Assembly: GCA_002269645.1 (NCBI GenBank)
Contig: NIVC01005214.1
Span: forward strand, 1-20,971
DNA length: 20,971 nt
Source of the DNA: Macrostomum lignano
Taxonomy: Eukaryota
Direction of reading: 5' to 3'
This document shows positions 646-20,230 of the stretch, one piece after another. How positions within the stretch are numbered: position 1 is the stretch's first letter; every line of letters starts with the position of its first letter. Below the pieces are notes generated by a model. It searched no databases. It was not told where the DNA came from and saw only the letters and a list, made by a program, of their open reading frames with translations. A program made the position numbers and the translations under genes.

Positions 646-1486
646 TGAGAGTGGAAAGGAGAAGGAATACACTAATTAGTATTAGAAGAGAGGAGAGGCG
701 AGAGGGGATAAGAGAAAACATGGAAGATAAGAGGAGATGCAAGTGGTGAGGAGAGAGCAGAGAAGAAGGGAGGAAGAAGCGAGAGGAGGGGAGAAAGGAG
801 GGAGAGGAAAGAGTAAATGTAAGAAGAGGGGAGAGATGAGACAGAGGATCGATGAGAGGAAAGTAGAGAAGAGTGAGAAGAGAGTAGAGATGAGAGAGCA
901 GAAAGAAGATGACAGAGGGTCAAGAGGAGGAGAGGAGAGGAGAGAGTAGAAAGGATAGAGAAGAGAGGAGATAAGAGGGGAGAGAGGAGTGAGAAGAGAA
1001 GAGATAGAGATAAGAGAGGGGTGTAAGAAGAGGGGAGAAAAGAGAGATGAGATTGTAGAGATGAGACAGATTAAAGGAGAGATGAGAGAGTAAAGATGAG
1101 AGATGAAAAAGGTGAGAGGAGAGTGCAGAGAGACGAGAGAAGACAAGAGAGGGAGACAGTATAGAAGAGGGAAGAGAAGAGAAGAGGAGAGGAGAAAGGA
1201 GAAAGGAAAGAGAGGAGTCAGAAGAGGTGAAAGAGAAGAGTACAGAGGAGATAAGTGAGAGAACGTATAAGAGAGTAAAGATGATAGATGAGAGAGCAGA
1301 GATGAGGGTGAACAGACGAGAGATGGGAGAGTAGAGAGAACAGAGGAGAGAGAAGAGAGAAGAGATTACAGAGACTAGAGGAGAGAGGAGAGACAGGGAG
1401 AGAGAAGAGGAAATAGGAGAATGAAGAGGGGAGAGAGTAGAGAGGAGAAGAGAGATGGGAGAGGAGAGATAAGAGAGAGAGAGAGG

Positions 1487-1553
<67 letters not shown>

Positions 1554-2030
1554 GAGCATAGAGAAACGAGAAGAGATAAGAGAGAAAAGATAAAAGAATA
1601 GAAAGGAGAGATGAGAGAGTAGAGGAGAGAGTTAAGAGATGAGAGAAAAGAATAGAGAGGAGAAGGAAGAGACGAGAGAGAAGAGGGGGAGAGAGGAGAG
1701 AGGAGAGGAGGGTCAACGAGAAACGAAAACGAAAACGAAAAAGTAGAGAGGAGGGAGGAGAGGAGAGAGAAAAGAAGAGGGAATTGAGATGAGATAAGAG
1801 ATATGAAAGAGAAGAAAGATGAGGGAGGATACGAAAGAAGATGGGAGAGAGAAGAGAGGAGAGCAGAGAGAAAACAAAAAGTAGAAAGGAGAGAGGAGAG
1901 GAGAGAGAAAAGAATGGGGAAGAGATGAGGGAAGATATGAGAGAAGAGAGGAGAGAAGAGAGAGGAGAGACGAGGGACAAGAGAGAAGAAAGGAAACAGA
2001 AGAGACGATAGAAATTTTAAAGGATCCAAG
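646..2030 (+). repeat. ~1.4-kb purine-rich (GA/GGA/GAA) low-complexity tract
   Basis: The + strand is almost all G and A. The Leu/Ser-rich minus-strand ORFs 682-2147 are by-products of this composition. Confidence 0.95.
1493..1548 (+). repeat. Perfect (GA)28 microsatellite
   Basis: Uninterrupted GA run near the middle of the low-complexity tract. Confidence 0.95.
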
Positions 2031-2486: not shown

Positions 2487-2622
2487 TGTCAATAATTCCA
2501 ATTTTATCCATATAGATCCGTGTCAATAATTTCCAGCTTATCCCCATGGCATGGCAGCTTATTGAAATAGCTGCCACCATTCAAGTCTATAGGCCATGTC
2601 AATAATTTTTAGCTTATCCCCA
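2487..2622. repeat. Three short direct repeats (tgtcaataatt...agcttatcccc) with an intervening hairpin
   Basis: tgtcaataatt occurs at 2487, 2521 and 2597, and the last two continue into agcttatcccca. There is an 8-bp inverted repeat tggcagct (2552-2559) / agctgcca (2569-2576). Confidence 0.75.
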
Positions 2623-2787
2623 CAGCTAAGATTGTGCAATTGTTTGTGTTTATTTTTGTGTGGATGTTAAATTGATATTGTTATTATTATTAGTATTATT
2701 ACTCATTGACATTATTATTATTGAGTTTTAGACTTTTGAATTTTGCAAATTGCAAGTCTCATTTGCCTCAATCTTAGGGTCTGTTTA

Positions 2788-2811
2788 GGGTAAGATCTCA
2801 TCAACCGAACA
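2788..2811 (+). repeat. Left terminal inverted repeat (24 bp)
   Basis: gggtaagatctcatcaaccgaaca is the exact reverse complement of 18622-18645. It is immediately followed by a second motif, agggatcttcaaaaccgaaca (2812-2832). Confidence 0.9.
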
Positions 2812-3179
2812 AGGGATCTTCAAAACCGAACATGCAAGTGACTTTCGTTTTTACTGTCTCATTGGAAATATATTTAAAGAGTCTATAAAAGTGCCATATC
2901 ATTTGAAAGAAAACATTCTCATCTACAAAATGAGATAAAGTTTAGACAATCTACTCAATAGATACTCGAGAAAATGAGCATTATTGATAGAAATTATTAA
3001 AGAAATACGCGTTTCAGAGTTTTTTCTTGATTTGGGATGTCTGCAGAAGAATTAATCTACAGACCACAATTTTTAACTTACATTCAAAACAAAATACTTT
3101 TTGAATTCAGTGTTAAATTTTCTACAAAGTAATATAACACACATACCAATCTGATGTATAGTTAAGCAAAAAATTCTAG

Positions 3180-3268
3180 TGTTCGGTTGATGATACCAAA
3201 TTACATGTTCGGTTCGGTTTTCAGATTTCAGAATCATCAACCGAACAGAAGAATCTTCAAAACCGAAC
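3180..3268. repeat. Left internal cluster of TIR-derived CCGAAC motifs (candidate transposase-binding repeats)
   Basis: tgttcggttgatga (3180-3193) and tgttcggttcggtttt (3206) are inverted. tcatcaaccgaacagaagaatcttcaaaaccgaac (3234-3268) nearly copies the terminal doublet 2798-2831. Confidence 0.8.
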
Positions 3269-3912
3269 GAACAAAAATTGTCCAAAAAAACTTATTTCTC
3301 GCTTGATTCTTCTACCTTACATTGAATAAGATCTTTTTTTAAAAGAACAACTCATTTAAGCCACGTAATTGCAAATATTTTTTGCTTAAAAATGTACCAA
3401 TTTTAATGCAAAATACATAGGAGGATTTTTCCATTTTGACAAAATATTCCTATTAAATGCTTTTATTTCTACTAACAGTAGCTAAAAGCGACATATAATT
3501 CCATATACATTTTCTTTTAAGAATTCTGCAACATAGAAAAGAAGATCGAATCAACAAGACAGGCCAAGATAGGCGCGGCCTACTAGGCCTAATGGTTGCC
3601 GCTTTACTGTATAATTGAAGAGTAAAAGGCCTAGTAAACGTCTAATTTAATTTAATTGTAAATAAGTACAATTACGAGTATTGTAACTGTAAGTAATACG
3701 AGCAAAGCCAAAGGCACAATATAAAATTTAATAATATGACTACAATAATATACATTTAGTAAAACCCTTATTAGAAAAGAAACAGATATATGCTAGGCTA
3801 TAGGCCTAGGCCCTATCAGAACGGGGAAATTTCAAAGATCTGACAAATTATATGATGGTAGGACGGAGAACTATACAAGGCGGTGAAGAGTCGCCTACTC
3901 CCAGATATATTA

Positions 3913-6900
3913 ATAGACAAATGCAGAGAGGCGCCCTTAATACATGTAGATTGATGGACAGAAGCAGTTAGAGAGGCGCCCTTCATACATGTAGATTGAT
4001 GGACAGAAGCAGTTAGAGAGGCGCCCTTCATACATGTAGATTGATGGACAGAAACAGTTAGAGAGGCGCCCTTCATACATGTAGATTGATGGACAGAAGC
4101 AGTTAGAGAGCGCCCTTGATCCAAGTAGATTGATAGACAGAAGCAGTTAGAGAGGCGCCATTCATACATGTAGATTGATAGACAGAAGCAGTTAGAGAGG
4201 CGCCCTTCATACATGTAGATTGATAGACAGAAGCAGTTAGAGAGGCGCCCTTCATACATGTAGATTGATAGACAGAAGCAGTTAGAGAGGCGCCCTTCAT
4301 ACATGTAGATTGATAGACAGAAGCAGTTAGAGAGGCGCCCTTCATACATGTAGATTGATGGAAAGAATTCGCAGTTAGAGAGGCGCCCTTCATACAAGTA
4401 GATTGATGGACAGAATTCGCAGTTAGAGAGGCGCCATTCATACATGTAGATTGATGGACAGAAGCAGTTAGAGAGGCGCCCTTCATACATGTAGATTGAT
4501 GGACAGAAGCAGTTAGAGAGGCGCCCTTCATACATGTAGATTGATAGACAGAAGCAGTTAGAGAGGCGCCCTTCATACATGTAGATTGATAGACAGAAGC
4601 AGTTAGAGAGGCGCCATTCATACATGTAGATTGATAGACAGAAGCAGTTAGAGAAGCGCCCTTCATACAAGTAGATTGATGGACAGAATTCGCAGTTAGA
4701 GAGGCGCCATTCATACATGTAGATTGATGGACAGAATTCGCAGTTAGAGAGGCGCCCTTCATACATGTAGATTGATGGACAGAAGCAGTTAGAGAGGCGC
4801 CCTTCATACATGTAGATTGATGCAGGACAGAAGCAGTTAGAGAGGCGCCCTTCATACAAGTAGATTGATGGACAGAAGCAGTTAGAGAGGCGCCCTTCAT
4901 ACATGTAGATTGATGGACGGAAGCAGTTAGAGAGGCGCCCTTCATACATGTAGATTGATGGACGGAAGCAGTTAGAGAGGCGCCCTTGATCCAAGTAGAT
5001 TGATAGACAGAAGCAGTTAGAGAGGCGCCCTTCATACATGTAGATTGATGGACAGAAGCAGTTAGAGAGGCGCCCTTCATACATGTAGATTGATAGACAG
5101 AAGCAGTTAGAGAGGCGCCCTTCATACATGTAGATTGATGGACAGAATTCGCAGTTAGAGAGGCGCCCTTCATACATGTAGATTGATAGACAGAAGCAGT
5201 TAGAGAGGCGCCCTTCATACATGTAGATTGATGGACAGAAGCAGTTAGAGAGGCGCCCTTGATCCAAGTAGATTGATAGACAGAAGCAGTTAGAGAGGCG
5301 CCCTTGATCCAAGTAGATTGATAGACAGAAGCAGTTAGAGAGGCGCCCTTCATACATGTAGATTGATGGACAGAAGCAGTTAGAGAGCGCCCTTGATCCA
5401 AGTAGATTGATAGACAGAAGCAGTTAGAGAGGCGCCATTCATACATGTAGATTGATAGACAGAAGCAGTTAGAGAGGCGCCTTCATACAAGTAGATTGAT
5501 GGACAGAATTCGCAGTTAGAGAGGCGCCCTTCATACATGTAGATTGATGGACAGAAGCAGTTAGAGAGGCGCCCTTGATCCAAGTAGATTGATAGACAGA
5601 AGCAGTTAGAGAGGCGCCCTTGATCCAAGTAGATTGATAGACAGAAGCAGTTAGAGAGGCGCCCTTGATCCAAGTAGATTGATAGACAGAAGCAGTTAGA
5701 GAGGCGCCCTTCATACATGTAGATTGATGGACAGAAGCAGTTAGAGAGGCGCCCTTCATACATGTAGATTGATGGACAGAAGCAGTTAGAGAGGCGCCCT
5801 TGATCCAAGTAGATTGATAGACAGAAGCAGTTAGAGAGGCGCCCTTGATCCAAGTAGATTGATAGACAGAAGCAGTTAGAGAGGCGCCCTTGATCCAAGT
5901 AGATTGATAGACAGAAGCAGTTAGAGAGGCGCCCTTCATACATGTAGATTGATGGACAGAAGCAGTTAGAGAGGCGCCCTTCATACATGTAGATTGATGG
6001 ACAGAAGCAGTTAGAGAGGCGCCCTTCATACATGTAGATTGATGGACAGAAGCAGTTAGAGAGGCGCCTTCATACATGTAGATTGATGGACAGAAGCAGT
6101 TAGAGAGGCGCCCTTCATACATGTAGATTGATGGACAGAAGCAGTTAGAGAGGCGCCCTTCATACATGTAGATTGATGGACAGAAGCAGTTAGAGAGGCG
6201 CCCTTCATACATGTAGATTGATAGACAGAAGCAGTTAGAGAGGCGCCCTTGATCCAAGTAGATTGATAGACAGAAGCAGTTAGAGAGGCGCCCTTGATCC
6301 AAGTAGATTGATAGACAGAAGCAGTTAGAGAGGCGCCCTTCATACAAGTAGATTGATGGACAGAAGCAGTTAGAGAGGCGCCCTTCATACATGTAGATTG
6401 ATGGACAGAAGCAGTTAGAGAGGCGCCCTTGATCCAAGTAGATTGATAGACAGAAGCAGTTAGAGAGGCGCCCTTGATCAAGTAGATTGATAGACAGAAG
6501 CAGTTAGAGAGGCGCCCTTCATACATGTAGATTGATGGACAGAAGCAGTTAGAGAGGCGCCCTTCATACATGTAGATTGATGGACAGAAGCAGTTAGAGA
6601 GGCGCCCTTCATACATGTAGATTGATGGACAGAAGCAGTTAGAGAGGCGCCCTTCATACATGTAGATTGATGGACAGAAGCAGTTAGAGAGGCGCCCTTC
6701 ATACATGTAGATTGATGGACAGAAGCAGTTAGAGAGGCGCCCTTGATCCAAGTAGATTGATAGACAGAAGCAGTTAGAGAGGCGCCCTTCATACATGTAG
6801 ATTGATAGACAGAAGCAGTTAGAGAGGCGCCCTTCATACATGTAGATTGATAGACAGAAGCAGTTAGAGAGGCGCCCTTCATACATGTAGATTGATAGAC

Positions 6901-9900
6901 AGAAGCAGTTAGAGAGGCGCCCTTCATACATGTAGATTGATAGACAGAAGCAGTTAGAGAGGCGCCCTTCATACATGTAGATTGATGGAAGAAGCAGTTA
7001 GAGAGGCGCCCTTCATACAAGTAGATTGATGGACAGAAGCAGTTAGAGAGGCGCCATTCATACATGTAGATTGATGGACAGAAGCAGTTAGAGAGGCGCC
7101 CTTCATACATGTAGATTGATGGACAGAAGCAGTTAGAGAGGCGCCCTTCATACATGTAGATTGATAGACAGAAGCAGTTAGAGAGGCGCCCTTCATACAT
7201 GTAGATTGATAGACAGAAGCAGTTAGAGAGGCGCCATTCATACATGTAGATTGATAGACAGAAGCAGTTAGAGAGGCGCCCTTCATACAAGTAGATTGAT
7301 GGACAGAAGCAGTTAGAGAGGCGCCATTCATACATGTAGATTGATGGACAGAAGCAGTTAGAGAGGCGCCCTTCATACATGTAGATTGATGGACAGAAGC
7401 AGTTAGAGAGGCGCCCTTCATACATGTAGATTGATGGACAGAAGCAGTTAGAGAGGCGCCCTTCATACAAGTAGATTGATGGACAGAAGCAGTTAGAGAG
7501 GCGCCCTTCATACATGTAGATTGATGGACGAAGCAGTTAGAGAGGCGCCCTTCATACATGTAGATTGATGGACAGAAGCAGTTAGAGAGGCGCCCTTGAT
7601 CCAAGTAGATTGATAGACAGAAGCAGTTAGAGAGGCGCCCTTCATACATGTAGATTGATGGACAGAAGCAGTTAGAGAGGCGCCCTTCATACATGTAGAT
7701 TGATAGACAGAAGCAGTTAGAGAGGCGCCCTTCATACATGTAGATTGATGGACAGAAGCAGTTAGAGAGGCGCCCTTCATACATGTAGATTGATAGACAG
7801 AAGCAGTTAGAGAGGCGCCCTTCATACATGTAGATTGATGGACAGAAGCAGTTAGAGAGGCGCCCTTGATCAAGTAGATTGATAGACAGAAGCAGTTAGA
7901 GAGGCGCCCTTGATCCAAGTAGATTGATAGACAGAAGCAGTTAGAGAGGCGCCCTTCATACATGTAGATTGATGGACAGAAGCAGTTAGAGAGCGCCCTT
8001 GATCCAAGTAGATTGATAGACAGAAGCAGTTAGAGAGGCGCCCTTCATACATGTAGATTGATAGACAGAAGCAGTTAGAGAGGCGCCTTCATACAAGTAG
8101 ATTGATGGACAGAAGCAGTTAGAGAGGCGCCCTTCATACATGTAGATTGATGGACAGAAGCAGTTAGAGAGGCGCCCTTGATCCAAGTAGATTGATAGAC
8201 AGAAGCAGTTAGAGAGGCGCCCTTGATCCAAGTAGATTGATAGACAGAAGCAGTTAGAGAGGCGCCCTTGATCCAAGTAGATTGATAGACAGAAGCAGTT
8301 AGAGAGGCGCCCTTCATACATGTAGATTGATGGACAGATGCAGTTAGAGAGGCGCCCTTCATACATGTAGATTGATGGACAGAAGCAGTTAGAGAGGCGC
8401 CCTTGATCCAAGTAGATTGATAGACAGAAGCAGTTAGAGAGGCGCCCTTGATCCAAGTAGATTGATAGACAGAAGCAGTTAGAGAGGCGCCCTTGATCCA
8501 AGTAGATTGATAGACAGAAGCAGTTAGAGAGGCGCCCTTCATACATGTAGATTGATGGACAGAAGCAGTTAGAGAGGCGCCCTTCATACATGTAGATTGA
8601 TGGACAGAAGCAGTTAGAGAGGCGCCCTTCATACATGTAGATTGATGGACAGAAGCAGTTAGAGAGGCGCCTTCATACATGTAGATTGATGGACAGAAGC
8701 AGTTAGAGAGGCGCCCTTCATACATGTAGATTGATGGACAGAAGCAGTTAGAGAGGCGCCCTTCATACATGTAGATTGATGGACAGAAGCAGTTAGAGAG
8801 GCGCCCTTCATACATGTAGATTGATAGACAGAAGCAGTTAGAGAGGCGCCCTTGATCCAAGTAGATTGATAGACAGAAGCAGTTAGAGAGGCGCCCTTGA
8901 TCCAAGTAGATTGATAGACAGAAGCAGTTAGAGAGGCGCCCTTCATACAAGTAGATTGATGGACAGAATTCGCAGTTAGAGAGGCGCCCTTCATACATGT
9001 AGATTGATGGACAGAAGCAGTTAGAGAGGCGCCCTTGATCCAAGTAGATTGATAGACAGAAGCAGTTAGAGAGGCGCCCTTGATCCAAGTAGATTGATAG
9101 ACAGAAGCAGTTAGAGAGGCGCCCTTCATACATGTAGATTGATGGACAGAAGCAGTTAGAGAGGCGCCCTTCATACATGTAGATTGATGGACAGAAGCAG
9201 TTAGAGAGGCGCCCTTCATACATGTAGATTGATGGACAGAAGCAGTTAGAGAGGCGCCTTTCATACATGTAGATTGATGGACAGAAGCAGTTAGAGAGGC
9301 GCCCTTGATCCAAGTAGATTGATAGACAGAAGCAGTTAGAGAGGCGCCCTTGATCCAAGTAGATTGATAGACAGAAGCAGTTAGAGAGGCGCCCTTCATA
9401 CATGTAGATTGATAGACAGAAGCAGTTAGAGAGGCGCCCTTGATCAAGTAGATTGATAGACAGAAGCAGTTAGAGAGGCGCCCTTGATCCAAGTAGATTG
9501 ATAGACAGAAGCAGTTAGAGAGGCGCCCTTCATACAAGTAGATTGATGGACAGAAGCAGTTAGAGAGGCGCCCTTCATACATGTAGATTGATGGACAGAA
9601 GCAGTTAGAGAGGCGCCCTTCATACATGTAGATTGATGGACAGAAGCAGTTAGAGAGGCGCCCTTCATACATGTAGATTGATAGACAGAAGCAGTTAGAG
9701 AGGCGCCCTTCATACATGTAGATTGATAGACAGAAGCAGTTAGAGAGGCGCCCTTGATCCAAGTAGATTGATAGACAGAAGCAGTTAGAGAGGCGCCCTT
9801 GATCCAAGTAGATTGATAGACAGAAGCAGTTAGAGAGGCGCCCTTCATACAAGTAGATTGATGGACAGAATTCGCAGTTAGAGAGGCGCCCTTCATACAT

Positions 9901-10820
9901 GTAGATTGATGGACAGAAGCAGTTAGAGAGGCGCCCTTGATCCAAGTAGATTGATAGACAGAAGCAGTTAGAGAGGCGCCCTTGATCCAAGTAGATTGAT
10001 AGACAGAAGCAGTTAGAGAGGCGCCCTTCATACATGTAGATTGATGGACAGAAGCAGTTAGAGAGGCGCCCTTGATCCAAGTAGATTGATAGACAGAAGC
10101 AGTTAGAGAGGCGCCCTTGATCCAAGTAGATTGATAGACAGAAGCAGTTAGAGAGGCGCCCTTCATACATGTAGATTGATGGACAGAATTCGCAGTTAGA
10201 GAGGCGCCCTTCATACATGTAGATTGATGGACAGAAGCAGTTAGAGAGGCGCCCTTGATCCAAGTAGATTGATAGACAGAAGCAGTTAGAGAGGCGCCCT
10301 TGATCCAAGTAGATTGATAGACAGAAGCAGTTAGAGAGGCGCCCTTGATCCAAGTAGATTGATAGACAGAAGCAGTTAGAGAGGCGCCCTTCATACATGT
10401 AGATTGATGGACAGATGCAGTTAGAGAGGCGCCCTTCATACATGTAGATTGATGGACAGAAGCAGTTAGAGAGGCGCCCTTGATCCAAGTAGATTGATAG
10501 ACAGAAGCAGTTAGAGAGGCGCCCTTGATCCAAGTAGATTGATAGACAGAAGCAGTTAGAGAGGCACCCTTGATCCAAGTAGATTGATAGACAGAAGCAG
10601 TTAGAGAGGCGCCCTTGATCCAAGTAGATTGATAGACAGAAGCAGTTAGAGAGGCACCCTTGATCCAAGTAGATTGATAGACAGAAGCAGTTAGAGAGGC
10701 ACCCTTGATCCAAGTAGATTGATAGACAGAAGCAGTTAGAGAGGCGCCCTTGATCCAAGTAGATTGATAGACAGAAGCAGTTAGAGAGGCACCCTTGATC
10801 CAAGTAGATTGATAGACAGA
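3913..10820. repeat. 45-bp tandem satellite, ~153 copies, two main monomer types
   Basis: The unit is gaagcagttagagaggcgccctt(catacat/gatccaa)gtagattgat(g/a)gaca. The 15-aa periodicity in the ORF track confirms the 45-nt period. Confidence 0.98.
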
Positions 10821-11265
10821 CTCCCTGTAAGCCTGTTTTTTGAAAATTGAATGGAAAATAGGTTTGATATTATTGTAAAAGTTTAATGTACTTTACCTTA
10901 AAAGCTGGTTGTCAATTGATAGGCGTTACTCAAGAGCTTTACTACAGCTAGATATATTTCCAAAATGGCCTAAATGATAACAAGACTTGGATAAATACTC
11001 AGGGCCTAGCCTTCTTAGAGCTAGCCTATGCCTAGTTTTAAAGCTGGCCTGTAGTGAGGAAATACTAGGCCTACCAATGTAAGAGTCAGCCTACTTGAGC
11101 TGTGGGATTTCAAACCAGCCAATAGGAACCAGACCGCGAATTTTTACTCTTGGATGACTAACGCGAATTCTCACATTCACATGCCACAGCCAGGCTCCAT
11201 ATCCTTATTTTTGCGCAGAACTAGGACCATTGCGCGTACGTCGGCCTAGGCCTCATCAATACAAC

Positions 11266-11542
11266 CAGTGGCGGCGCCAAGTTGGGGGGCAGAGAGGGCT
11301 GCTGCCCCCGGGTGACCACCCTCCTAAGACCACCCTACCATCCTTCCGTGGGGTGACCCACCATTAGTTTTTTAGCGCTCGTTGTATGCGTTTTTGTGAG
11401 ATTATAGCGTATACTCTAATTTTAAAAATTCGCTGAGGGAGGGGTTTGAAAACCCAACCACCGCCCCTCCCCCCTTAATCCACAGAATTTACCTTAATCA
11501 GCATCGCCGCCACTGCGCACCGCCAAGGCTGCACCGCCACTA
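11266..11542. mobile_element. hAT-type MITE (277 bp) with 8-bp TSD
   Basis: The left end is cagtggcggcgc and the outer right end is gcaccgccacta (10/12 inverted match). The flanks aatacaac (11258-11265) and aatagaac (11543-11550) match 7/8. A perfect 11-bp inner TIR copy lies at 11505-11515. Confidence 0.8.
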
Positions 11543-11865
11543 AATAGAACCAACATTAATGGGCATATCGAAAGAAAATATACATTTGGCCTATCGGAAA
11601 TTTCAGTCACTAGGGCCTAAAGCAAAACGTAGGCCTATAGTACTCGTATAGGCCTAAAACACCTTGTTTAAAGATTAGTAATTGAAGATACATATCTACA
11701 TAACTTAATAAACTCTAATTTGTACCTAAACTCCTAATTTTCTCCGAGAACTCATCCTAGATTTATGGCTATCAATTACTAACTACCGTAATTAGCCCTA
11801 ATTGGTTGTTCTGGTCAATTACGCGAAAGAGCGAAAGAGCGAAATGGTTTCTGTATTTTAAAGTT

Positions 11866-14522
11866 AAAATGCTGAGCTAGGCCAAACTCAGCTCATTCTG
11901 AATTCATGATAGACTCAGGTGCTGGGATACACAGAGACAGTTAGAGAAGGAATCAGCCGGTTTGATGAAGATTATAGCGGCTCTCAAGTCCTCTCTGTGT
12001 TTGAGTGAAAATGCTGAGCTAGGCCAAACTCAGCTCATTCTGAATTCATGATAGACTCAGGTGCTGGGATACACAGAGACAGTTAGAGAAGGAATCAGCC
12101 GGTTTGATGAAGATTATAGCGGCTCTCAAGTCCTCTCTGTGTTTGAGTGAAAATGCTGAGCTAGGCCAAACTCAGCTCATTCTGAATTCATGATAGACTC
12201 AGGTGCTGGGACACACAGAGACAGTTAGAGAAGGAATCAGCCGGTTTGATGAAGATTATAGCGGCTCTCAAGTCCTCTCTGTGTTTGAGTGAAAATGCTG
12301 AGCTAGGCCAAACTCAGCTCATTCTGAATTCATGATAGACTCAGGTGCTGGGATACACAGAGACAGTTAGAGAAGGAATCAGCCGGTTTGATGAAGATTA
12401 TAGCGGCTCTCAAGTCCTCTGTGTTTGAGTGAAAATGCTGAGCTAGGCCAAACTCAGCTCATTCTGAATTCATGATAGACTCAGGTGCTGGGATACACAG
12501 AGACAGTTAGAGAAGGAATCAGCCGGTTTGATGAAGATTATAGCGGCTCTCAAGTCCTCTCTGTGTTTGAGTGAAAATGCTGAGCTAGGCCAAACTCAGC
12601 TCATTCTGAATTCATGATAGACTCAGGTGCTGGGATACACAGAGACAGTTAGAGAAGGAATCAGCCGGTTTGATGAAGATTATAGCGGCTCTCAAGTCCT
12701 CTCTGTGTTTGAGTGAAAATGCTGAGCTAGGCCAAACTCAGCTCATTCTGAATTCATGATAGACTCAGGTGCTGGGATACACAGAGACAGTTAGAGAAGG
12801 AATCAGCCGGTTTGATGAAGATTATAGCGGCTCTCAAGTCCTCTCTGTGTTTGAGTGAAAATGCTGAGCTAGGCCAAACTCAGCTCATTCTGAATTCATG
12901 ATAGACTCAGGTGCTGGGATACACAGAGACAGTTAGAGAAGGAATCAGCCGGTTTGATGAAGATTATAGCGGCTCTCAAGTCCTCTGTGTTTGAGTGAAA
13001 ATGCTGAGCTAGGCCAAACTCAGCTCATTCTGAATTCATGATAGACTCAGGTGCTGGGATACACAGAGACAGTTAGAGAAGGAATCAGCCGGTTTGATGA
13101 AGATTATAGCGGCTCTCAAGTCCTCTCTGTGTTTGAGTGAAAATGCTGAGCTAGGCCAAACTCAGCTCATTCTGAATTCATGATAGACTCAGGTGCTGGG
13201 ATACACAGAGACAGTTAGAGAAGGAATCAGCCGGTTTGATGAAGATTATAGCGGCTCTCAAGTCCTCTCTGTGTTTGAGTGAAAATGCTGAGCTAGGCCA
13301 AACTCAGCTCATTCTGAATTCATGATAGACTCAGGTGCTGGGATACACAGAGACAGTTAGAGAAGGAATCAGCCGGTTTGATGAAGATTATAGCGGCTCT
13401 CAAGTCCTCTCTGTGTTTGAGTGAAAATGCTGAGCTAGGCCAAACTCAGCTCATTCTGAATTCATGATAGACTCAGGTGCTGGGATACACAGAGACAGTT
13501 AGAGAAGGAATCAGCCGGTTTGATGAAGATTATAGCGGCTCTCAAGTCCTCTCTGTGTTTGAGTGAAAATGCTGAGCTAGGCCAAACTCAGCTCATTCTG
13601 AATTCATGATAGACTCAGGTGCTGGGATACACAGAGACAGTTAGAGAAGGAATCAGCCGGTTTGATGAAGATTATAGCGGCTCTCAAGTCCTCTGTGTTT
13701 GAGTGAAAATGCTGAGCTAGGCCAAACTCAGCTCATTCTGAATTCATGATAGACTCAGGTGCTGGGATACACAGAGACAGTTAGAGAAGGAATCAGCCGG
13801 TTTGATGAAGATTATAGCGGCTCTCAAGTCCTCTCTGTGTTTGAGTGAAAATGCTGAGCTAGGCCAAACTCAGCTCATTCTGAATTCATGATAGACTCAG
13901 GTGCTGGGATACACAGAGACAGTTAGAGAAGGAATCAGCCGGTTTGATGAAGATTATAGCGGCTCTCAAGTCCTCTCTGTGTTTGAGTGAAAATGCTGAG
14001 CTAGGCCAAACTCAGCTCATTCTGAATTCATGATAGACTCAGGTGCTGGGATACACAGAGACAGTTAGAGAAGGAATCAGCCGGTTTGATGAAGATTATA
14101 GCGGCTCTCAAGTCCTCTCTGTGTTTGAGTGAAAATGCTGAGCTAGGCCAAACTCAGCTCATTCTGAATTCATGATAGACTCAGGTGCTGGACACACAGA
14201 GACAGTTAGAGAAGGAATCAGCCGGTTTGATGAAGATTATAGCGGCTCTCAAGTCCTCTGTGTTTGAGTGAAAATGCTGAGCTAGGCCAAACTCAGCTCA
14301 TTCTGAATTCATGATAGACTCAGGTGCTGGGACACACAGAGACAGTTAGAGAAGGAATCAGCCGGTTTGATGAAGATTATAGCGGCTCTCAAGTCCTCTC
14401 TGTGTTTGAGTGAAAATGCTGAGCTAGGCCAAACTCAGCTCATTCTGAATTCATGATAGACTCAGGTGCTGGGATACACAGAGACAGTTAGAGAAGGAAT
14501 CAGCCGGTTTGATGAAGATTAT
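11866..14522. repeat. 142-bp tandem satellite, 18 full copies plus one partial
   Basis: The gctgagctag anchor starts at 11871, 12013, 12155, 12297, 12437 ... 14418. Copies are near-identical and differ only by a CT deletion, a T>C change and one G deletion. Confidence 0.98.
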
Positions 14523-15183
14523 ACGCAAACAAAAAGTATGAAATCTTTCAGTCCTTTTACGAATTGATGAGTGGCCGAAGCTGCCTTGGGCAATTCCATC
14601 TTCACACCCGTGCCAAAACATAGACAACGTGTGCGAATTGAGCCGATTTTCGAGTTACTTTTTACTCGTAGGTGCGAAAAAGACAGTTGGAAGACAGACG
14701 GTTTGCGATAAGGGCTGTGTCTATTAATTCATTTTTACTGGGAACCGAATTTAAATTCGCACATTTTAAGTCCGTAGGATTAGGCTCAAATTCTAAGCAC
14801 GATTTTTCGCACCCAATAGTCAAGTATTGGTCTATTGTCTAGAATCCCAGACCCTGGGCCTTTTCTGAGGCAATAGCGGCATGATCCACCTATCCTTATC
14901 TCTGACTATCGACTGTTTTGCAAAATTCGGTTTGTTTTCGCACTTCGTGGTGAGCCTGGAACCAATTCGCGCACATTTTAGACATGATGGGCCTAACGAA
15001 GCGCCAGAAGCATTATGTCATAACTTCACGCCCTTTCCACGAAGTAAATAAATGATATGGCCTAAATAGCGACCGCAATGAAGCGAGAGAGATAAATCCA
15101 TGCTTTGCATGCAGCATCCCGTTCATACTCCTGTTGCTCAATTTTGATATTTATTTTTAGAAGGAGCAGATGGAAAGAAAAAA

Positions 15184-16357
15184 GCAGATGGAGAGGAAGA
15201 GGCGGATGCAGAGGAAGGGCGGATGCAGAGGAAGGGATGGATGAAGAGGAAGGGATGGAATCAGAGGAAGGGCAGATGCAGAGGAAGGGGCGGATGCAGA
15301 GGAAGGGCGGATGCAGAGGAAGGGCGGGTGTAGAGGAAGGGGCAGATGCAGAGGAAGGGCGGATGCAGAGGAAGGGGCGGATGCAGAGGAAGGGCGGATG
15401 CAGAGGAAGGGCGGGTGTAGAGGAAGGGGCAGATGCAGAGGAAGGGCGGATGCAGAGGAAGGGGCGGATGCAGAGGAAGGGCGGATGCAGAGGAAGGGGC
15501 GGATGCAGAGGAAGGGATGGATGAAGAGGAAGGGATGGAATCAGAGGAAGGGATGGAATCAGAGGAAGGGCGGATGCAGAGGAAGGGGCGGATGCAGAGG
15601 AAGGGATGGAATCAGAGGAAGGGATGGAATCAGAGGAAGGGCGGATGCAGAGGAAGGGGCGGATGCAGAGGAAGGGGCGGATGCAGAGGAAGGGGCGGAT
15701 GCAGAGGAAGGGCGGATGCAGAGGAAGGGCGGATGCAGAGGAAGGGGGGTGTAGAGGAAGGGGCAGATGCAGAGGAAGGGCGGATGCAGAGGAAGGGGCG
15801 GATGCAGAGGAAGGGCGGATGCAGAGGAAGGGCGGGTGTAGAGGAAGGGGCAGATGCAGAGGAAGGGATGCATGCAGAGGAAGGGCGGATGCAGAGGAAG
15901 GGCGGATGCAGAGGAAGGGCAGATGCAGAGGAAGGGATGCATGCAGAGGAAGGGCGGATGCAGAGGAAGGGATGGAATCAGAGGAAGGGCAGATGCAGAG
16001 GAAGGGCGGGTGTAAGGAAGGGGCGGATGCAGAGGAAGGGCGGATGCAGAGGAAGGGCGGATGCAGAGGAAGGGCGGATGCAGAGGAAGGGCGGATGCAG
16101 AGGAAGGCGGGTGTAGAGGAAGGGGCGGATGCAGAGGAAGGGATGCATGCAGAGGAAGGGCGGATGCAGAGGAAGGGATGCATGCAGAGGAAGGGCAGAT
16201 GCAGAGGAAGGGATGGAATCAGAGGAAGGGCAGATGCAGAGGAAGGGCGGGTGTAGAGGAAGGGGCGGATGCAGAGGAAGGGCAGATGCAGAGGAAGGGC
16301 GGATGCAGAGGAAGGGCAGATGCAGAGGAAGGGCGGATGCAGAGGAAGGGGCGGATG
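15184..16357 (+). repeat. 17/18-bp G-rich minisatellite (gatgcagaggaaggg(g)cg), ~65 copies
   Basis: The core cagaggaaggg repeats with variant linkers cggatg, cagatg, cgggtgt, atggaat and atgcatg. Confidence 0.95.
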
Positions 16358-16903
16358 GAAAAGGAGTGGATAGGGAGAAAGGATCCGCTGGCTTATTCTA
16401 GTCCCAGTGTCAGCAGATTTAAGCATAAAAAATCCTTTGGCTGATCCAGAATTTGGGATTCCAACTGTAAATAAAAAAGCGCTACATATAGATGTGGCCA
16501 GAGTGAGAGATGGATAATTCCCATCTAAAGTTCTTGCATCCAGATTTCAAAAACTGAACGACGAGGAGAAAATTTGGCCTACGCAGACATGACCAGTTTT
16601 CCTCGTGCTGTCATTGGTTAGCCGAATTCCTTGCGCAGTCATGAGGATTGGCTGTTTCTGTTTGCTTTCCTGCGGCACCAATCAACTTTCCAACGTCCAT
16701 TCATGCGTTTAAAATATTTGAATCAGGTTAAAAACCAATTGGCCCTAGCTACGTTAGACATTTGATTTTCAAGGCTCATCAATATCAACTGACATCTGCA
16801 ACATCGTTTCGAGATCGGACATCCGGATTACTGCTGCCTTCGCGAAACGCTTAAAAATTTTGCTTCTAATTATTGACTTTGTATTCATAGTCTACGTTAA
16901 CGG

Positions 16904-17594
16904 CCTCTCTATCTCTCCATCAGCCGCCCGTCTACTCTCTATCAGCCGCCCGTCTCCTCTCTATCAGCCGCCCGTCTCCTCTCTATCAGCCGCCCGTCTC
17001 CTCTCTATCAGCTGCCTGTCTCCTCTCTATCAGCCGCCCGTCTCCTCTCTATCAGCCGCTTGTCTATCTCCTCTCTATAAGCTGCCTGTCTCCTCTCTCT
17101 CTATCAGCCGCCCGTCTCCTCTCTATCAGCCGCTTGTCTATCTCCTCTCTATAAGCTGCCTGTCTGTCTCCTCTCTATCAGCCGCCCGTCTCCTCTCTAT
17201 CAGCCGCCCGTCTCCTTTCTATCAGCCGCTTGTCTATCTCCTCTCTATCAGCTTTCTGTCTCCTCTCTATCAGCCGCCCGTCTCCTCTCTATCAGCCGCT
17301 TGTCTATCTCCTCTCTATCAGCGGCTTGTCTCCTCTCTATCAGCCGCCTGCCTGTCTCCTCTTTATCAGCTTTCTGTCTATCTCCACTCTATCAGCCGCC
17401 CGTCTCCCCTCTATCAGCCACCCGTCTCCTCTCTATCAGCCGCCCGTCTCCTCTCTATCAGCCGCCCGTCTCCTCTCTATCAGCCGCCCGTCTCCTCTCT
17501 ATCAGCCGCCTGCCTGTCTCCTCTCTATCAGCTGCCTGTCTATCTCCTCTCTATCAGCTGCCTGTCTATCTCCTCTCTATCAGCTCTCTATCAG
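16904..17594 (+). repeat. 22-bp C/T-rich minisatellite (ctctctatcagccgcccgtctc), ~30 copies
   Basis: cagccg recurs at 16921, 16943 and 16965 (period 22). Variants include cagctgcctgtc and cagccgcttgtctatc. Confidence 0.95.
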
Positions 17595-18400
17595 ATTTTG
17601 AATATTTATTGCGAGCTTTTTCTTTCTTGTCTTTGCAAAAAATCTACATGTATACAAGGCTGGGGTAAACAGATGAAGCCAATGAGCCTATGGTTTTGGC
17701 GGTCCACCTTGTTGCAGTGATTGCAGTTTGAGAACGAGGTGATGGTTTTCTGGAAAATTTTAAGAATCCACAGCATTTTTTCTTCACATCTTGCATGCGA
17801 CTACTTGAAGTAAAAATTTACGAGTATGATGAGAAAAAATAAAATATAAAATTACAAGAACTTGTTTGCAAAAAAATCGTTTTTTTACAATTTTTTACTT
17901 TTACTTTATTCTTCTTCCTTAAGTTTTTGAAAAATATTAACTATATGATAAAAAAAGGTTAAAAGTATACTAGAGGTACTTTTTTCTTTCAAAAAAAGGT
18001 AATAATGCCAAAATAAATGCTTATGTTGAAAGCTGAAACATTAGTAGGTCCTTCAGAAGAACTCCGAAATGGGCAAAGTATCAGCTCTGCTTTAAAGAAC
18101 TTGTGTTTTTTAAAAATTCTTTAATGCTTTTCCGATTTGACTGTCTAAAATAAGTAGAAAAATATGGCTTTTTATCAATTTAGCATGAAAGAGTTTAAAG
18201 AAATGGCAAAAAGGTAAAAATCACGATTTTTCTATTCAATGGGGGTACTCTATTCAAATGCAGATAAACAATATTTTTCTACATTTATCTAAGCGAAAGT
18301 TATACTTTTTAGAAAGAGTATGAATTAATCTTTACAATGATATATATTTTAGAAAAAACGAACGAGAAATAAAAAAGTTATTAGTGTTCAAACACAAAAA

Positions 18401-18462
18401 CCGAACGTCAGATACCCTGTTCGGTTTGAAGATACCCTAGAATCATCGTTCGGTTTTGAGAT
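18401..18462. repeat. Right internal cluster of CCGAAC motifs
   Basis: ccgaac lies at 18401. tgttcggtttgaagataccct (18418-18438) reverse-complements to agggtatcttcaaaccgaaca, which closely resembles left 2812-2832. cgttcggttttgagat lies at 18447. Confidence 0.8.
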
Positions 18463-18621
18463 AAAATCATCAATAACTTTTTTTCTACTTGTGCAATAAA
18501 GTAAAGCAAACATTCATTTGAAAGAAAAAAATGTTTTAAACAACTTCGGAGTAGTTTCATTTTATTACACATTAAACTTTTTTTGCTATCTATGAGAGAA
18601 TGTCGAAAAATGACACTTTCA

Positions 18622-18645
18622 TGTTCGGTTGATGAGATCTTACCC
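18622..18645 (-). repeat. Right terminal inverted repeat (24 bp)
   Basis: tgttcggttgatgagatcttaccc followed by TA. Confidence 0.9.
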
Positions 18646-19945
18646 TATGTTGTATAATTATAGAGTGTAACATTATAAGATAGTTAAAGTTATTAAAATA
18701 CATTATTATAGCTTTTCTATCATTTCATTAGACTCATTTTAGGTCGTAATTAAACTTACCGTTTTAACAAATCATTTTATTAAAAATAAAGCTATACAAA
18801 AATAATTTGTGCTTTAATAGACTTTTTTACCTTTTAAAAACTTGAATAAATTTATTTTATAGCTTTATTGCTTTCAAATTGCCAAAAAACGAATTTTCAT
18901 AAAACTTGCCCCTGATTTTTGGATTTCACCATTATCAATGAAAATGGTAACATACAATTATTGTAAAAAGATTTATAACTTTTTACTTGACAAATTTCAA
19001 AAGCAAGATGTCTTTTTATCCAGGCAAATAAATTTTATCAAATACAGTTAAAAAGTACTAATAAAATAACTAGGCCTATCAAAATCTCACTGGGCTGGAG
19101 TCCCTACTTATGGTTATACTCAACTTAAATGGGAATAAAGATTACATACTACCATCTAATATACTAAATACAGACATACTAAATTTACTTACCCCCATAT
19201 AATGTAATTAGTCTTTGTACTCTTAGGATAGGCAAAGTCTCCAAAGATAACTTCATCATCTTTTTCTACTATTTCTTTATTTTTTATAGTGTAGTCTCGA
19301 ATTATTGAAAGAACATCAGCCATGACAATACAAATTATTAACTACTTTAATTTTTAAGGACTTGATCAGAAAAAAATTCACTGTAATTTTAGCCTGCAAA
19401 TTTACAACGATTTCTTTCTAAGGCTCTAAACTCAACTAGCTCTCTAGCGGCTACCGAACAACACTATACTATACACTCGTCGTCATGCAATACAATATTT
19501 TTTCGTTGACTAGTTTTAAAAACTAGTTTTAATTCTTTAAAAATAACAAAATTGTATAAAAAAGCAAATGCTAAAAAGCAATGAAAGTTAAAAAATTTTC
19601 AAAAAAATTAAACGAAATGTTTTTTATATGCTTTACTTTGGATCCAAATTCTTTTTTAAAAATTACTGTTTTCTAACTCAAATCCTCGCGCGCCAACTCC
19701 AACGCGACACTCTGGATAGATCACTCCACTCTCGCCCATTTTCATTTATGGATGTTGATCTAAACTGAAACTTGAAGGTAAAAACACTGAGTTACTGACT
19801 TGACTATAGGTCACATGGGCAAAAATTACGCAACTGGTGTGGTGTACAATGCTATAATTATATACTTTTTTTATTTAGACCTACAATACAATATGTGGCT
19901 TGTGGCCTAATGGTGCCCTAACCCACTGACCAAGAGCAATGGCTA

Positions 19946-20230
19946 GAGTTCCAGCACTGGAACCCATTTTCTAATAGCTATGGATCGGCAGTCTTCTGCA
20001 GGCAGTTATCTACTAATACTAATGACATCTTTGAACATTAGAAGTATCTTCTTTTGAATCTCATCATTTTGTTTTGATCTCAGGCCCTATTTTGAACAAA
20101 ATCTCAATATAAACCACCTGTCAAAAATTAAAATGTTTCTGCTATATTATACCCATAAACTGCACTACAGGAATACCATTGCTAGATCCAAAGCCATTAA
20201 AAATGGGTTCCAATGCCAGAACTGGAACTC
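19946..20230. mobile_element. Small MITE with ~45-bp imperfect TIRs, TA-flanked
   Basis: The left end ta|gagttccagcactggaacccattttctaatagctatggatc aligns to the reverse complement of the right end, ta|gagttccagttctggcattggaacccatttttaatggctttggatc. Confidence 0.75.

What the first reader, a model, noticed from the sequence alone, without database searches (positions are those of the whole stretch)
2788..18645. Giant 15.9-kb TIR element loaded with four different satellites and no transposase
Seen: perfect 24-bp TIRs with TA flanks lie 15,858 bp apart. Between them are 45-bp (6.9 kb), 142-bp (2.7 kb), 17/18-bp (1.2 kb) and 22-bp (0.7 kb) arrays and a nested MITE. Removing the arrays leaves about 4.4 kb. 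Established: TA duplication and multiple sub-terminal binding repeats are typical of Tc1/mariner-pogo elements, and TEs are known to seed satellites. Inference: this is a non-autonomous satellite carrier or incubator. The ends are still identical, so it may be young or mobilisable in trans. TA is a weak TSD, so two independent half-elements remain possible.
Basis: partly seen in the sequence, partly recalled or inferred. Interest (0 to 1): 0.8.

Follow-up and report, generated by a model that had tools for sequence, protein, structure and literature searches.

The report
Satellite-filled transposon-like element in an intron
Two perfect matching transposon ends lie 15.9 kb apart in the first intron of an animal parafibromin (CDC73) gene and enclose four tandem-repeat arrays and no gene; this is probably one non-autonomous DNA transposon swollen by satellites, a known kind of thing, but no other copy or empty site could be found to prove it.

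Summary
A perfect inverted repeat sits at 2786-2811 and 18622-18647. It can be read as a 24-bp TIR plus TA, or as a 26-bp TIR. The four arrays have the stated sizes, and about 4.4 kb of unique DNA remains with no transposase trace.

The two ends clearly belong to one family. The 9-mer AACCGAACA occurs 11 times within 490 bp of the left end or 250 bp of the right end, and only once elsewhere in 21 kb.

New findings:
- The junction has a second consistent reading: a 26-bp TAGGG... TIR flanked by a 4-bp direct repeat, TGTT/TGTT (chance about 0.7-1%). Unlike TA, this would argue for a single insertion.
- The element lies in intron 1 of a CDC73/parafibromin gene, 544 bp from exon 1.
- A satellite-like GA-rich array also lies outside the ends.
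- The superfamily is unresolved. The ends look hAT-like, but there is no 8-bp TSD. Tc1/mariner and ISL2EU-like remain possible.

No related sequence was found in any collection searched, so single-element status, family structure and mobility remain untested. My best reading (about 0.55) is one non-autonomous TIR element whose internal arrays expanded in place. The main rival (about 0.3) is two separate partial copies bracketing satellite-rich intron DNA. Transposons carrying satellites are well documented, so interest is modest.

The parts
2782..2785 (.). Left flank TGTT. It forms a 4-bp direct repeat with 18648-18651 and is a candidate TSD if the TIR is 26 bp.
   Evidence: The empirical chance of a 4-bp flank match is 0.0066, and of any match of 4 bp or more is 0.0098.
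2786..2787 (.). Left TA. It is either a TA target duplication or the first two bases of a 26-bp TIR.
   Evidence: TA/TA arises by chance at 0.008.
2788..2811 (+). Left terminal inverted repeat, GGGTAAGATCTCATCAACCGAACA (site A).
   Evidence: repeat I1, 100% complementary to 18622-18645.
2812..2832 (+). Second, tandem terminal site (site B), AGGGATCTTCAAAACCGAACA. It is missing at the right terminus.
3170..3275 (.). Inner left cluster of end-like sites. An inverted pair at 3180-3225 includes a degenerate right-end-like TGTTCGGTTGATGATACC. It is followed by a direct copy of sites A+B (3234-3268, 91% identical to 2798-2831).
   Evidence: (I2).
3906..10820 (+). 45-bp satellite array of 153 monomers in two main variants (CATACATG and GATCCAAG). 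It contains an internal segmental duplication of about 56 monomers. The left edge is degenerate.
   Evidence: (3906-6768 vs 7965-10820, 94%).
11266..11542 (.). Nested hAT-like MITE with TIR YAGTGGCGG and 8-bp flanks AATACAAC/AATAGAAC.
11862..14523 (+). 142-bp satellite array of 18.8 monomers, most of them identical. Every fourth or fifth monomer is 2 bp shorter, and the last monomer is truncated.
15187..16357 (+). 17-bp array (GATGCAGAGGAAGGGCG), purine-rich on the + strand, with degenerate edges.
16913..17592 (+). 22-bp array (CTCTCTATCAGCCGCCCGTCTC), pyrimidine-rich on the + strand. It shows weak inverted similarity to the 17-bp unit.
   Evidence: 15 of 300 shuffles reach the observed score.
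18398..18465 (.). Inner right cluster of end-like sites, including TGTTCGGTTTGAAGATACCCTA, a degenerate copy of the right terminus.
18622..18645 (-). Right terminal inverted repeat.
   Evidence: repeat I1.
18646..18651 (.). Right TA (18646-18647) followed by TGTT (18648-18651).
19192..19323 (-). Context: exon 1 of a CDC73/parafibromin orthologue (44 codons, then a GTAAGT donor). The element starts 544 bp into intron 1. Exon 2 is not in the window.
   Evidence: 196 hits, best 73% identity; Pfam CDC73_N in full-length hits.
660..2030 (+). Context: a GA-rich low-complexity array lying outside the TIR pair.

Best explanation
This is one copy of a non-autonomous cut-and-paste (TIR) DNA transposon, inserted once into intron 1 of the host's parafibromin gene.

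Its recognisable transposon parts are two AT-rich terminal domains. The left one is about 490 bp and the right about 250 bp. Each starts with the identical 24/26-bp TIR and holds clusters of the 9-bp motif AACCGAACA in both orientations. These are presumably binding sites for a transposase supplied in trans by an unseen autonomous relative.

The body carries no gene. It is a string of four short-unit repeats that expanded where they sit, by unequal exchange and slippage. It was later hit by a small hAT-type MITE.

Shown: the ends, the motifs, the arrays, the in-place duplication, the absence of coding capacity, and the intronic position.
Inferred: that both ends arrived together, that the motifs bind a transposase, and that the element can still move.
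The superfamily is left open.
For: - Perfect 26-nt inverted repeat in the correct outward orientation.
- 11 of 12 AACCGAACA sites are confined to the two terminal domains (shuffles 1.8 +/- 1.2).
- No full second copy of either terminus lies between them. The internal end-like sequences lack the terminal GGGTAAGATCT or are degenerate, so two complete independent elements are excluded.
- The 4-bp TGTT direct repeat immediately outside the 26-bp repeat has a chance probability of 0.0066 to 0.0098.
- Array growth in situ: a 2.9-kb stretch of the 45-bp array is duplicated at 94% with the same order of monomer variants. The 17-bp array has decayed edges. The 142-bp monomers are near-identical.
- No transposase or any Pfam domain in the 4.4 kb of unique DNA.
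- Precedent: MITEs and foldback elements with internal satellites, such as miDNA4, Xstir and Tetris (PMC12628747, PMC9659126, PMC4079207).
Against: - No other copy, empty site or autonomous partner was found anywhere, so the family consensus is unknown.
- TA is uninformative, and TGTT was noticed after the fact among several TSD lengths tried.
- The arms share nothing beyond the TIR and the short motifs.
- A satellite-like array also lies outside the ends (660-2030). The palindromic word TAGGCCTA occurs both in the flanks and in the interior spacers, but not in the terminal domains. The interior could therefore be ordinary intron DNA.
- The interior GC content (40-60%) differs from that of the ends and flanks (24-36%).
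Confidence: 0.55

Rival explanations
1. Two separate insertions of the same short element family. Each is now partial or has a degenerate inner end, and they happen to face each other across about 15 kb of pre-existing, satellite-rich intron DNA. The pair might at most move together as a composite ('macrotransposon'), as closely linked Ac/Ds ends do in maize (my own knowledge).
For: - Degenerate right-end-like sequence at 3180-3197 (TGTTCGGTTGATGA..TACC), which would close a unit of about 410 bp (2788-3197).
- A second right-end-like sequence ending ACCCTA at 18418-18441.
- Another tandem array lies outside the pair.
- TAGGCCTA words are shared by the interior spacers and the flanks but are absent from the terminal domains.
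- The interior composition is unlike the ends.
- No similarity between the arms.
- TA flanks would accompany every insertion of a TA-targeting family.
Against: - It needs both copies to have lost or degraded their inner ends while the two outer ends stayed 26/26 identical.
- It needs the TGTT/TGTT flank match to be chance (about 0.7-1%).
- The inner end-like sequences are equally well explained as accessory binding sites.
Confidence: 0.3
2. An assembly artefact. Array collapse, expansion or a false join has brought together two ends, or arrays, that are not contiguous in the real chromosome.
For: The 142-bp monomers are 99-100% identical over 2.7 kb, and the 45-bp array runs 6.9 kb. These are the kinds of sequence assemblers mishandle. 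No reads were available to check.
Against: - All array borders run into unique sequence without N gaps.
- The 45-bp array has an ordered, non-trivial variant pattern.
- The flanks on both sides are similar AT-rich intron DNA.
Confidence: 0.07

Closest known systems
miDNA4 (Tc1/mariner MITE of Xenopus tropicalis carrying an internal satellite) and the Xstir/Xmix MITE-satellite composites
   Same: Non-autonomous TIR element with TA-type flanks. A tandem repeat sits between the ends and varies by in-place expansion, and it is proposed as a seed for satellite DNA (PMC12628747, PMC9659126).
   Different: Those elements carry one satellite, and copy-number series were documented across many copies. 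Here there are four unrelated or weakly related arrays totalling 11.4 kb in a single copy, with no family data. The TIR does not start like known Tc1/mariner ends.
Tetris / foldback elements of Drosophila virilis
   Same: Apparently non-autonomous and modular, with internal tandem repeats that grow into kb-size arrays (PMC4079207).
   Different: In Tetris the repeats lie inside long TIRs, so the arms are homologous. Here the arms share only 24-26 bp plus short motifs, and the arrays are central and not mirrored.
hAT elements (Ac/Ds type)
   Same: The 26-bp repeat starts TAGGG, which fits the YARNG terminal pattern and resembles Ac's TAGGGATGAAA. Many short sub-terminal motifs occur in both orientations within a few hundred bp of each end (my own knowledge of Ac).
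   Different: The 8-bp flanks do not match (GGTCTGTT vs TGTTGTAT). No hAT transposase remnant is present.
ISL2EU group of the PHIS superfamily
   Same: 2-bp target duplication and TIRs that usually start GG. The group is restricted to animals (PMC4122938, PMC4482050).
   Different: The reported duplication is typically AT, not TA. No THAP transposase or YqaJ gene is present here.
CACTA elements with sub-terminal or internal satellite arrays (e.g. Jozin in Chenopodium)
   Same: Large non-autonomous TIR elements whose bulk is tandem repeats that also give rise to satellites (PMC8978399, PMC9659126 Table 1).
   Different: No CACTA termini and no 3-bp TSD. The host is an animal.

Membership tests
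Tc1/mariner-pogo (non-autonomous derivative) | TA target-site duplication | tested here: met
   TA lies on both sides of the 24-bp TIR. It is also explicable as part of a 26-bp TIR, and its chance probability is 0.008.
Tc1/mariner-pogo (non-autonomous derivative) | Ends shared with an autonomous DD(E/D) transposase-encoding copy | not testable with these tools
   There is no transposase in the window. The host genome is absent from every collection searched.
Tc1/mariner-pogo (non-autonomous derivative) | Terminal nucleotides like known families (CAGT.., YCAGG.., CTCCCTCC..) | tested here: inconclusive
   The TIR starts GGGTAAG, unlike the termini I recall for Tc1, mariner, pogo or Stowaway. 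This rests on memory, not on a database comparison.
hAT | 8-bp target-site duplication | tested here: not met
   GGTCTGTT vs TGTTGTAT, 3 of 8 positions match.
hAT | TIR beginning YARNG plus short sub-terminal repeats in both orientations | tested here: met
   TAGGG start. AACCGAACA occurs 11 times in the terminal domains, on both strands.
ISL2EU (PHIS superfamily) | 2-bp TSD (typically AT) and a GG-initial TIR | tested here: inconclusive
   The GG start is met, but the dinucleotide is TA, not AT (PMC4122938, PMC4482050).
Families with a 4-bp TSD (Sola, Ginger) | 4-bp direct repeat flanking the TIR | tested here: inconclusive
   TGTT/TGTT flanks the 26-bp repeat. However, reported Sola2 TSDs are AT-rich AWWT (PMC3627910), and there is no transposase to compare.
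Satellite-carrying MITE/TIR elements (miDNA4, Xstir, Tetris type) | Tandem repeats located between the two ends of a non-autonomous TIR element | tested here: met
   Four arrays lie within 2788-18645.
Satellite-carrying MITE/TIR elements (miDNA4, Xstir, Tetris type) | The same repeats are present, in varying copy number, in other copies of the element and/or as free arrays | not testable with these tools
   No related DNA or ORF was retrieved.
Foldback elements | Long inverted arms built of the repeats | tested here: not met
   The arms share only the 24-bp TIR (score 48 vs shuffles 27 +/- 3). No mirrored arrays exist apart from a weak 17-bp vs 22-bp resemblance.

The most novel reading that the evidence does not exclude
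The element is a still-mobilisable member of a family of giant non-autonomous transposons that carries several different satellites as one cassette and spreads them through the genome. It may belong to an undescribed lineage with TAGGG termini and a 4-bp target duplication.
Probability: 0.12. Interest if true: 0.6.

Novelty: new member of a known kind. Interest (0 to 1): 0.35.

Why it matters
If it is a single mobile unit, it would be an unusually large and heavily loaded example of a transposon acting as a carrier and nursery for satellite DNA. It would hold four arrays at different stages: one near-identical, one with higher-order structure, and two decaying. That would make a convenient natural series for studying how satellites are born and dispersed. 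It also lies 544 bp from exon 1 of a conserved Paf1-complex gene and inflates that gene's first intron to more than 19 kb. The general phenomenon is already well documented, however, so without family data this is an interesting locus rather than a new principle.

Tried and rejected
- Searches for other copies with the 18-20-nt TIR core: viral contigs and metagenome contigs gave nothing. Prokaryotic genome contigs gave one hit in an Erysipelotrichaceae MAG. That matches chance expectation for a 20-mer, and its flanks differ.
- A 31-nt core of the 45-bp satellite is absent from metagenome and viral contigs.
- Protein-space trick for finding other copies through ORF calls on raw assemblies: a 4,608-aa chimera of all unique-region ORFs of 38 aa or more gave no hit. 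A 1,933-aa chimera of array ORFs gave one spurious low-complexity hit.
- Exon 1 alone gave no word-index hit and is not on record as an exact product. The closest contig (L002, Logan run SRR16767946; its ORF is nearly identical over exon 1 to that of the tapeworm Anoplocephala perfoliata) shares no DNA with the window.
- Full-text search of papers for the TIR and satellite strings found nothing.
- Rfam and tRNA scans found nothing.
- TSD readings of 3, 5, 6, 8 and 9 bp are rejected by inspection.
- An isolated inverted fragment of the 45-bp unit at 17641-17660 looked like a mirror-image seed. It does not beat shuffled controls (score 26 vs 22 +/- 3, maximum 35).
- Common origin of the satellites: the 45-bp and 142-bp units share ACAGArrCAGTTAGAGA (2 of 300 shuffles reach the score). 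The 17-bp unit vs the reverse-complemented 22-bp unit reaches it in 15 of 300. This is suggestive only.
- Polinton/Maverick, Helitron and foldback readings are rejected: there are no ORFs, no matching termini and no long arms.
- The host species could not be identified. The best named exon-1 relatives are flatworms at 68-73% identity.
Full report
**Observation**

The longest inverted repeat in the window is TAGGGTAAGATCTCATCAACCGAACA at 2786-2811, paired with 18622-18647. It is 26 nt and perfectly complementary. This equals the reported 24-bp TIR plus TA on each side, and the element spans 15,858 bp.

Tandem Repeats Finder gives four arrays:
- a 45-bp array at 3925-10820 (153 copies);
- a 142-bp array at 11862-14523 (18.8 copies, 99% matches);
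- a 17-bp array at 15187-16357;
- a 22-bp array at 16913-17567, extending to about 17592.

Together these cover about 11.4 kb and leave about 4.4 kb. A perfect 26-mer inverted match in 21 kb is not a chance event.

**The two ends are related beyond the TIR**

The 9-mer AACCGAACA (up to one mismatch) occurs 12 times, against 1.8 +/- 1.2 in shuffles. Eleven occurrences lie within 490 bp of the left end or 250 bp of the right end, on both strands.
- The left terminus holds two tandem sites: A (GATCTCATCAACCGAACA) and B (GATCTTCAAAACCGAACA).
- The A+B pair recurs as a direct copy at 3234-3268 (91% identical) and as an inverted copy at 3180-3225.
- The right terminus has only site A. It looks like the left end minus one unit of about 21 bp.
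- The right end also has B-like sites at 18398-18465.
- Apart from these motifs the arms share nothing.

This is the layout of transposase-binding sub-terminal repeats.

**Interior**

No ORF, chimeric ORF query or Pfam scan shows any transposase trace.

The arrays grew where they are:
- The 45-bp array has two main monomer variants in an ordered pattern, and a block of about 56 monomers is duplicated (3906-6768 vs 7965-10820, 94% identical).
- The 142-bp monomers are mostly identical, with a recurring 2-bp-shorter variant.
- The 17-bp array fades into degenerate copies at both edges.
- The 17-bp and 22-bp arrays have opposite strand bias.

Similarity among the four units is weak: 2 of 300 and 15 of 300 shuffles reach the observed scores for the two best pairs. 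A hAT-type MITE (11266-11542, TIR YAGTGGCGG, 8-bp flanks matching 7 of 8) is nested in one spacer.

**Context**

On the minus strand, 19323-19192 encodes [44 protein letters not shown], followed by GTAAGT.
- A full HMMER scan found 196 relatives. All align to the N-terminus of proteins whose full-length members carry Pfam CDC73_N and CDC73_C, so this is parafibromin.
- The best named relatives are flatworms, at 68-73% identity. This does not identify the host.
- Exon 2 is not in the window.

The element, together with a separate GA-rich array at about 660-2030, therefore lies in an intron 1 of more than 19 kb. The element starts 544 bp from the splice donor.

**The junction**

Two readings are self-consistent.
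1. A 24-bp TIR with a TA/TA duplication.
2. A 26-bp TIR starting TAGGG, flanked by the 4-bp direct repeat TGTT (2782-2785 and 18648-18651).

Random position pairs in the window's unique DNA give these chance rates:

| Flank match | Chance |
|---|---|
| 4-bp match | 0.0066 |
| Any match of 4 bp or more | 0.0098 |
| TA/TA | 0.0082 |

TA says nothing about a single event if the family always targets TA. TGTT would, although I noticed it only after trying several lengths. Flanks of 3, 5, 6, 8 and 9 bp do not match.

**Superfamily**

The superfamily remains unresolved.
- The TAGGG start and the many two-orientation sub-terminal motifs look hAT-like (my own knowledge of Ac), but the 8-bp TSD test fails.
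- Tc1/mariner fits TA but not the terminal bases I know.
- ISL2EU has a 2-bp TSD and GG-initial TIRs, but the duplication is typically AT (PMC4122938, PMC4482050).
- Known Sola2 4-bp TSDs are AT-rich (PMC3627910).

**One element or two?**

For one element:
- The outer ends are perfectly identical, and no complete partner end lies inside.
- The TGTT repeat flanks the pair.
- The orientation is correct.

For two partial copies around satellite-rich intron DNA:
- Degenerate right-end-like sequences lie at 3180-3197 and 18418-18441.
- An array lies outside the pair.
- The palindromic word TAGGCCTA is shared by the flanks and the interior spacers but is absent from the terminal domains.
- The interior is richer in GC.

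I put one element at about 0.55, two insertions (possibly acting as a composite) at about 0.30, and misassembly at about 0.07.

**External evidence**

None could be obtained.
- The TIR core and a satellite core are absent from viral, metagenome and prokaryotic genome collections. The one exception is a single chance 20-mer.
- ORF chimeras of the unique regions and of the arrays have no relatives among 5.8 billion proteins.
- No paper prints these sequences.

The host genome is evidently not in any collection available here.

**Comparison and verdict**

Non-autonomous DNA transposons that hold, expand and seed satellites are well described. Examples are miDNA4 and Xstir in Xenopus, Tetris in Drosophila virilis, the pearl/CvA MITEs in bivalves, and CACTA elements in plants (PMC12628747, PMC9659126, PMC4079207, PMC8978399).

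This locus is best filed as a new, unusually large and multi-satellite member of that kind, with single-element status unproven and the superfamily open. The decisive test is a genome-wide and population-level search for paired copies and for one of the two predicted empty sites.

Noticed in passing
window 2443, 3584, 3627, 3801, 11066, 11247, 11630, 11649, 19071, 20265: The palindromic word TAGGCCTA/AGGCCTA is strongly over-represented in unique DNA. It often sits in runs such as ctaggctaTAGGCCTAggccctat. It occurs inside and outside the TIR pair but not in the terminal domains. Its origin is unknown; it could be a decayed short repeat or a genome-wide signature.
   Followed up: partly
window 2774-2791: TTAGGGT occurs twice, 11 bp apart, at the left junction: once in the flank and once spanning the flank/TIR border. 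It may be coincidence, a target preference, or a footprint of an earlier insertion.
   Followed up: no
window 660-2030: A 1.4-kb purine-rich (GA-rich) low-complexity array with a pure (GA)n core near 1490-1550 lies outside the element. It shows that this intron accumulates tandem repeats independently of the TIR pair.
   Followed up: partly
window 19947-19986 and 20185-20223: A 40-bp inverted repeat pair (85% identical) bounds a unit of about 277 bp upstream of the CDC73 exon 1. It is probably another MITE.
   Followed up: no
window 11266-11542: A GC-rich hAT-like MITE with TIR YAGTGGCGG and 8-bp flanks AATACAAC/AATAGAAC. The right end carries a tandem second copy of the TIR motif.
   Followed up: yes
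window 2489-2625: Three copies of a motif of about 25 bp (GTCAATAATTyCCAGCTTATCCCCA-like) lie in the left flank.
   Followed up: no
window 19192-19323 (minus strand): Exon 1 of a parafibromin/CDC73 orthologue. No sequence above 73% identity exists among 1.84 billion cluster representatives, so the host lineage is poorly sampled in protein databases.
   Followed up: yes
window 15187-17592: The purine-rich 17-bp array and the pyrimidine-rich 22-bp array flank a 556-bp spacer like a loose inverted pair. The unit similarity is only marginal (15 of 300 shuffles reach the score).
   Followed up: partly
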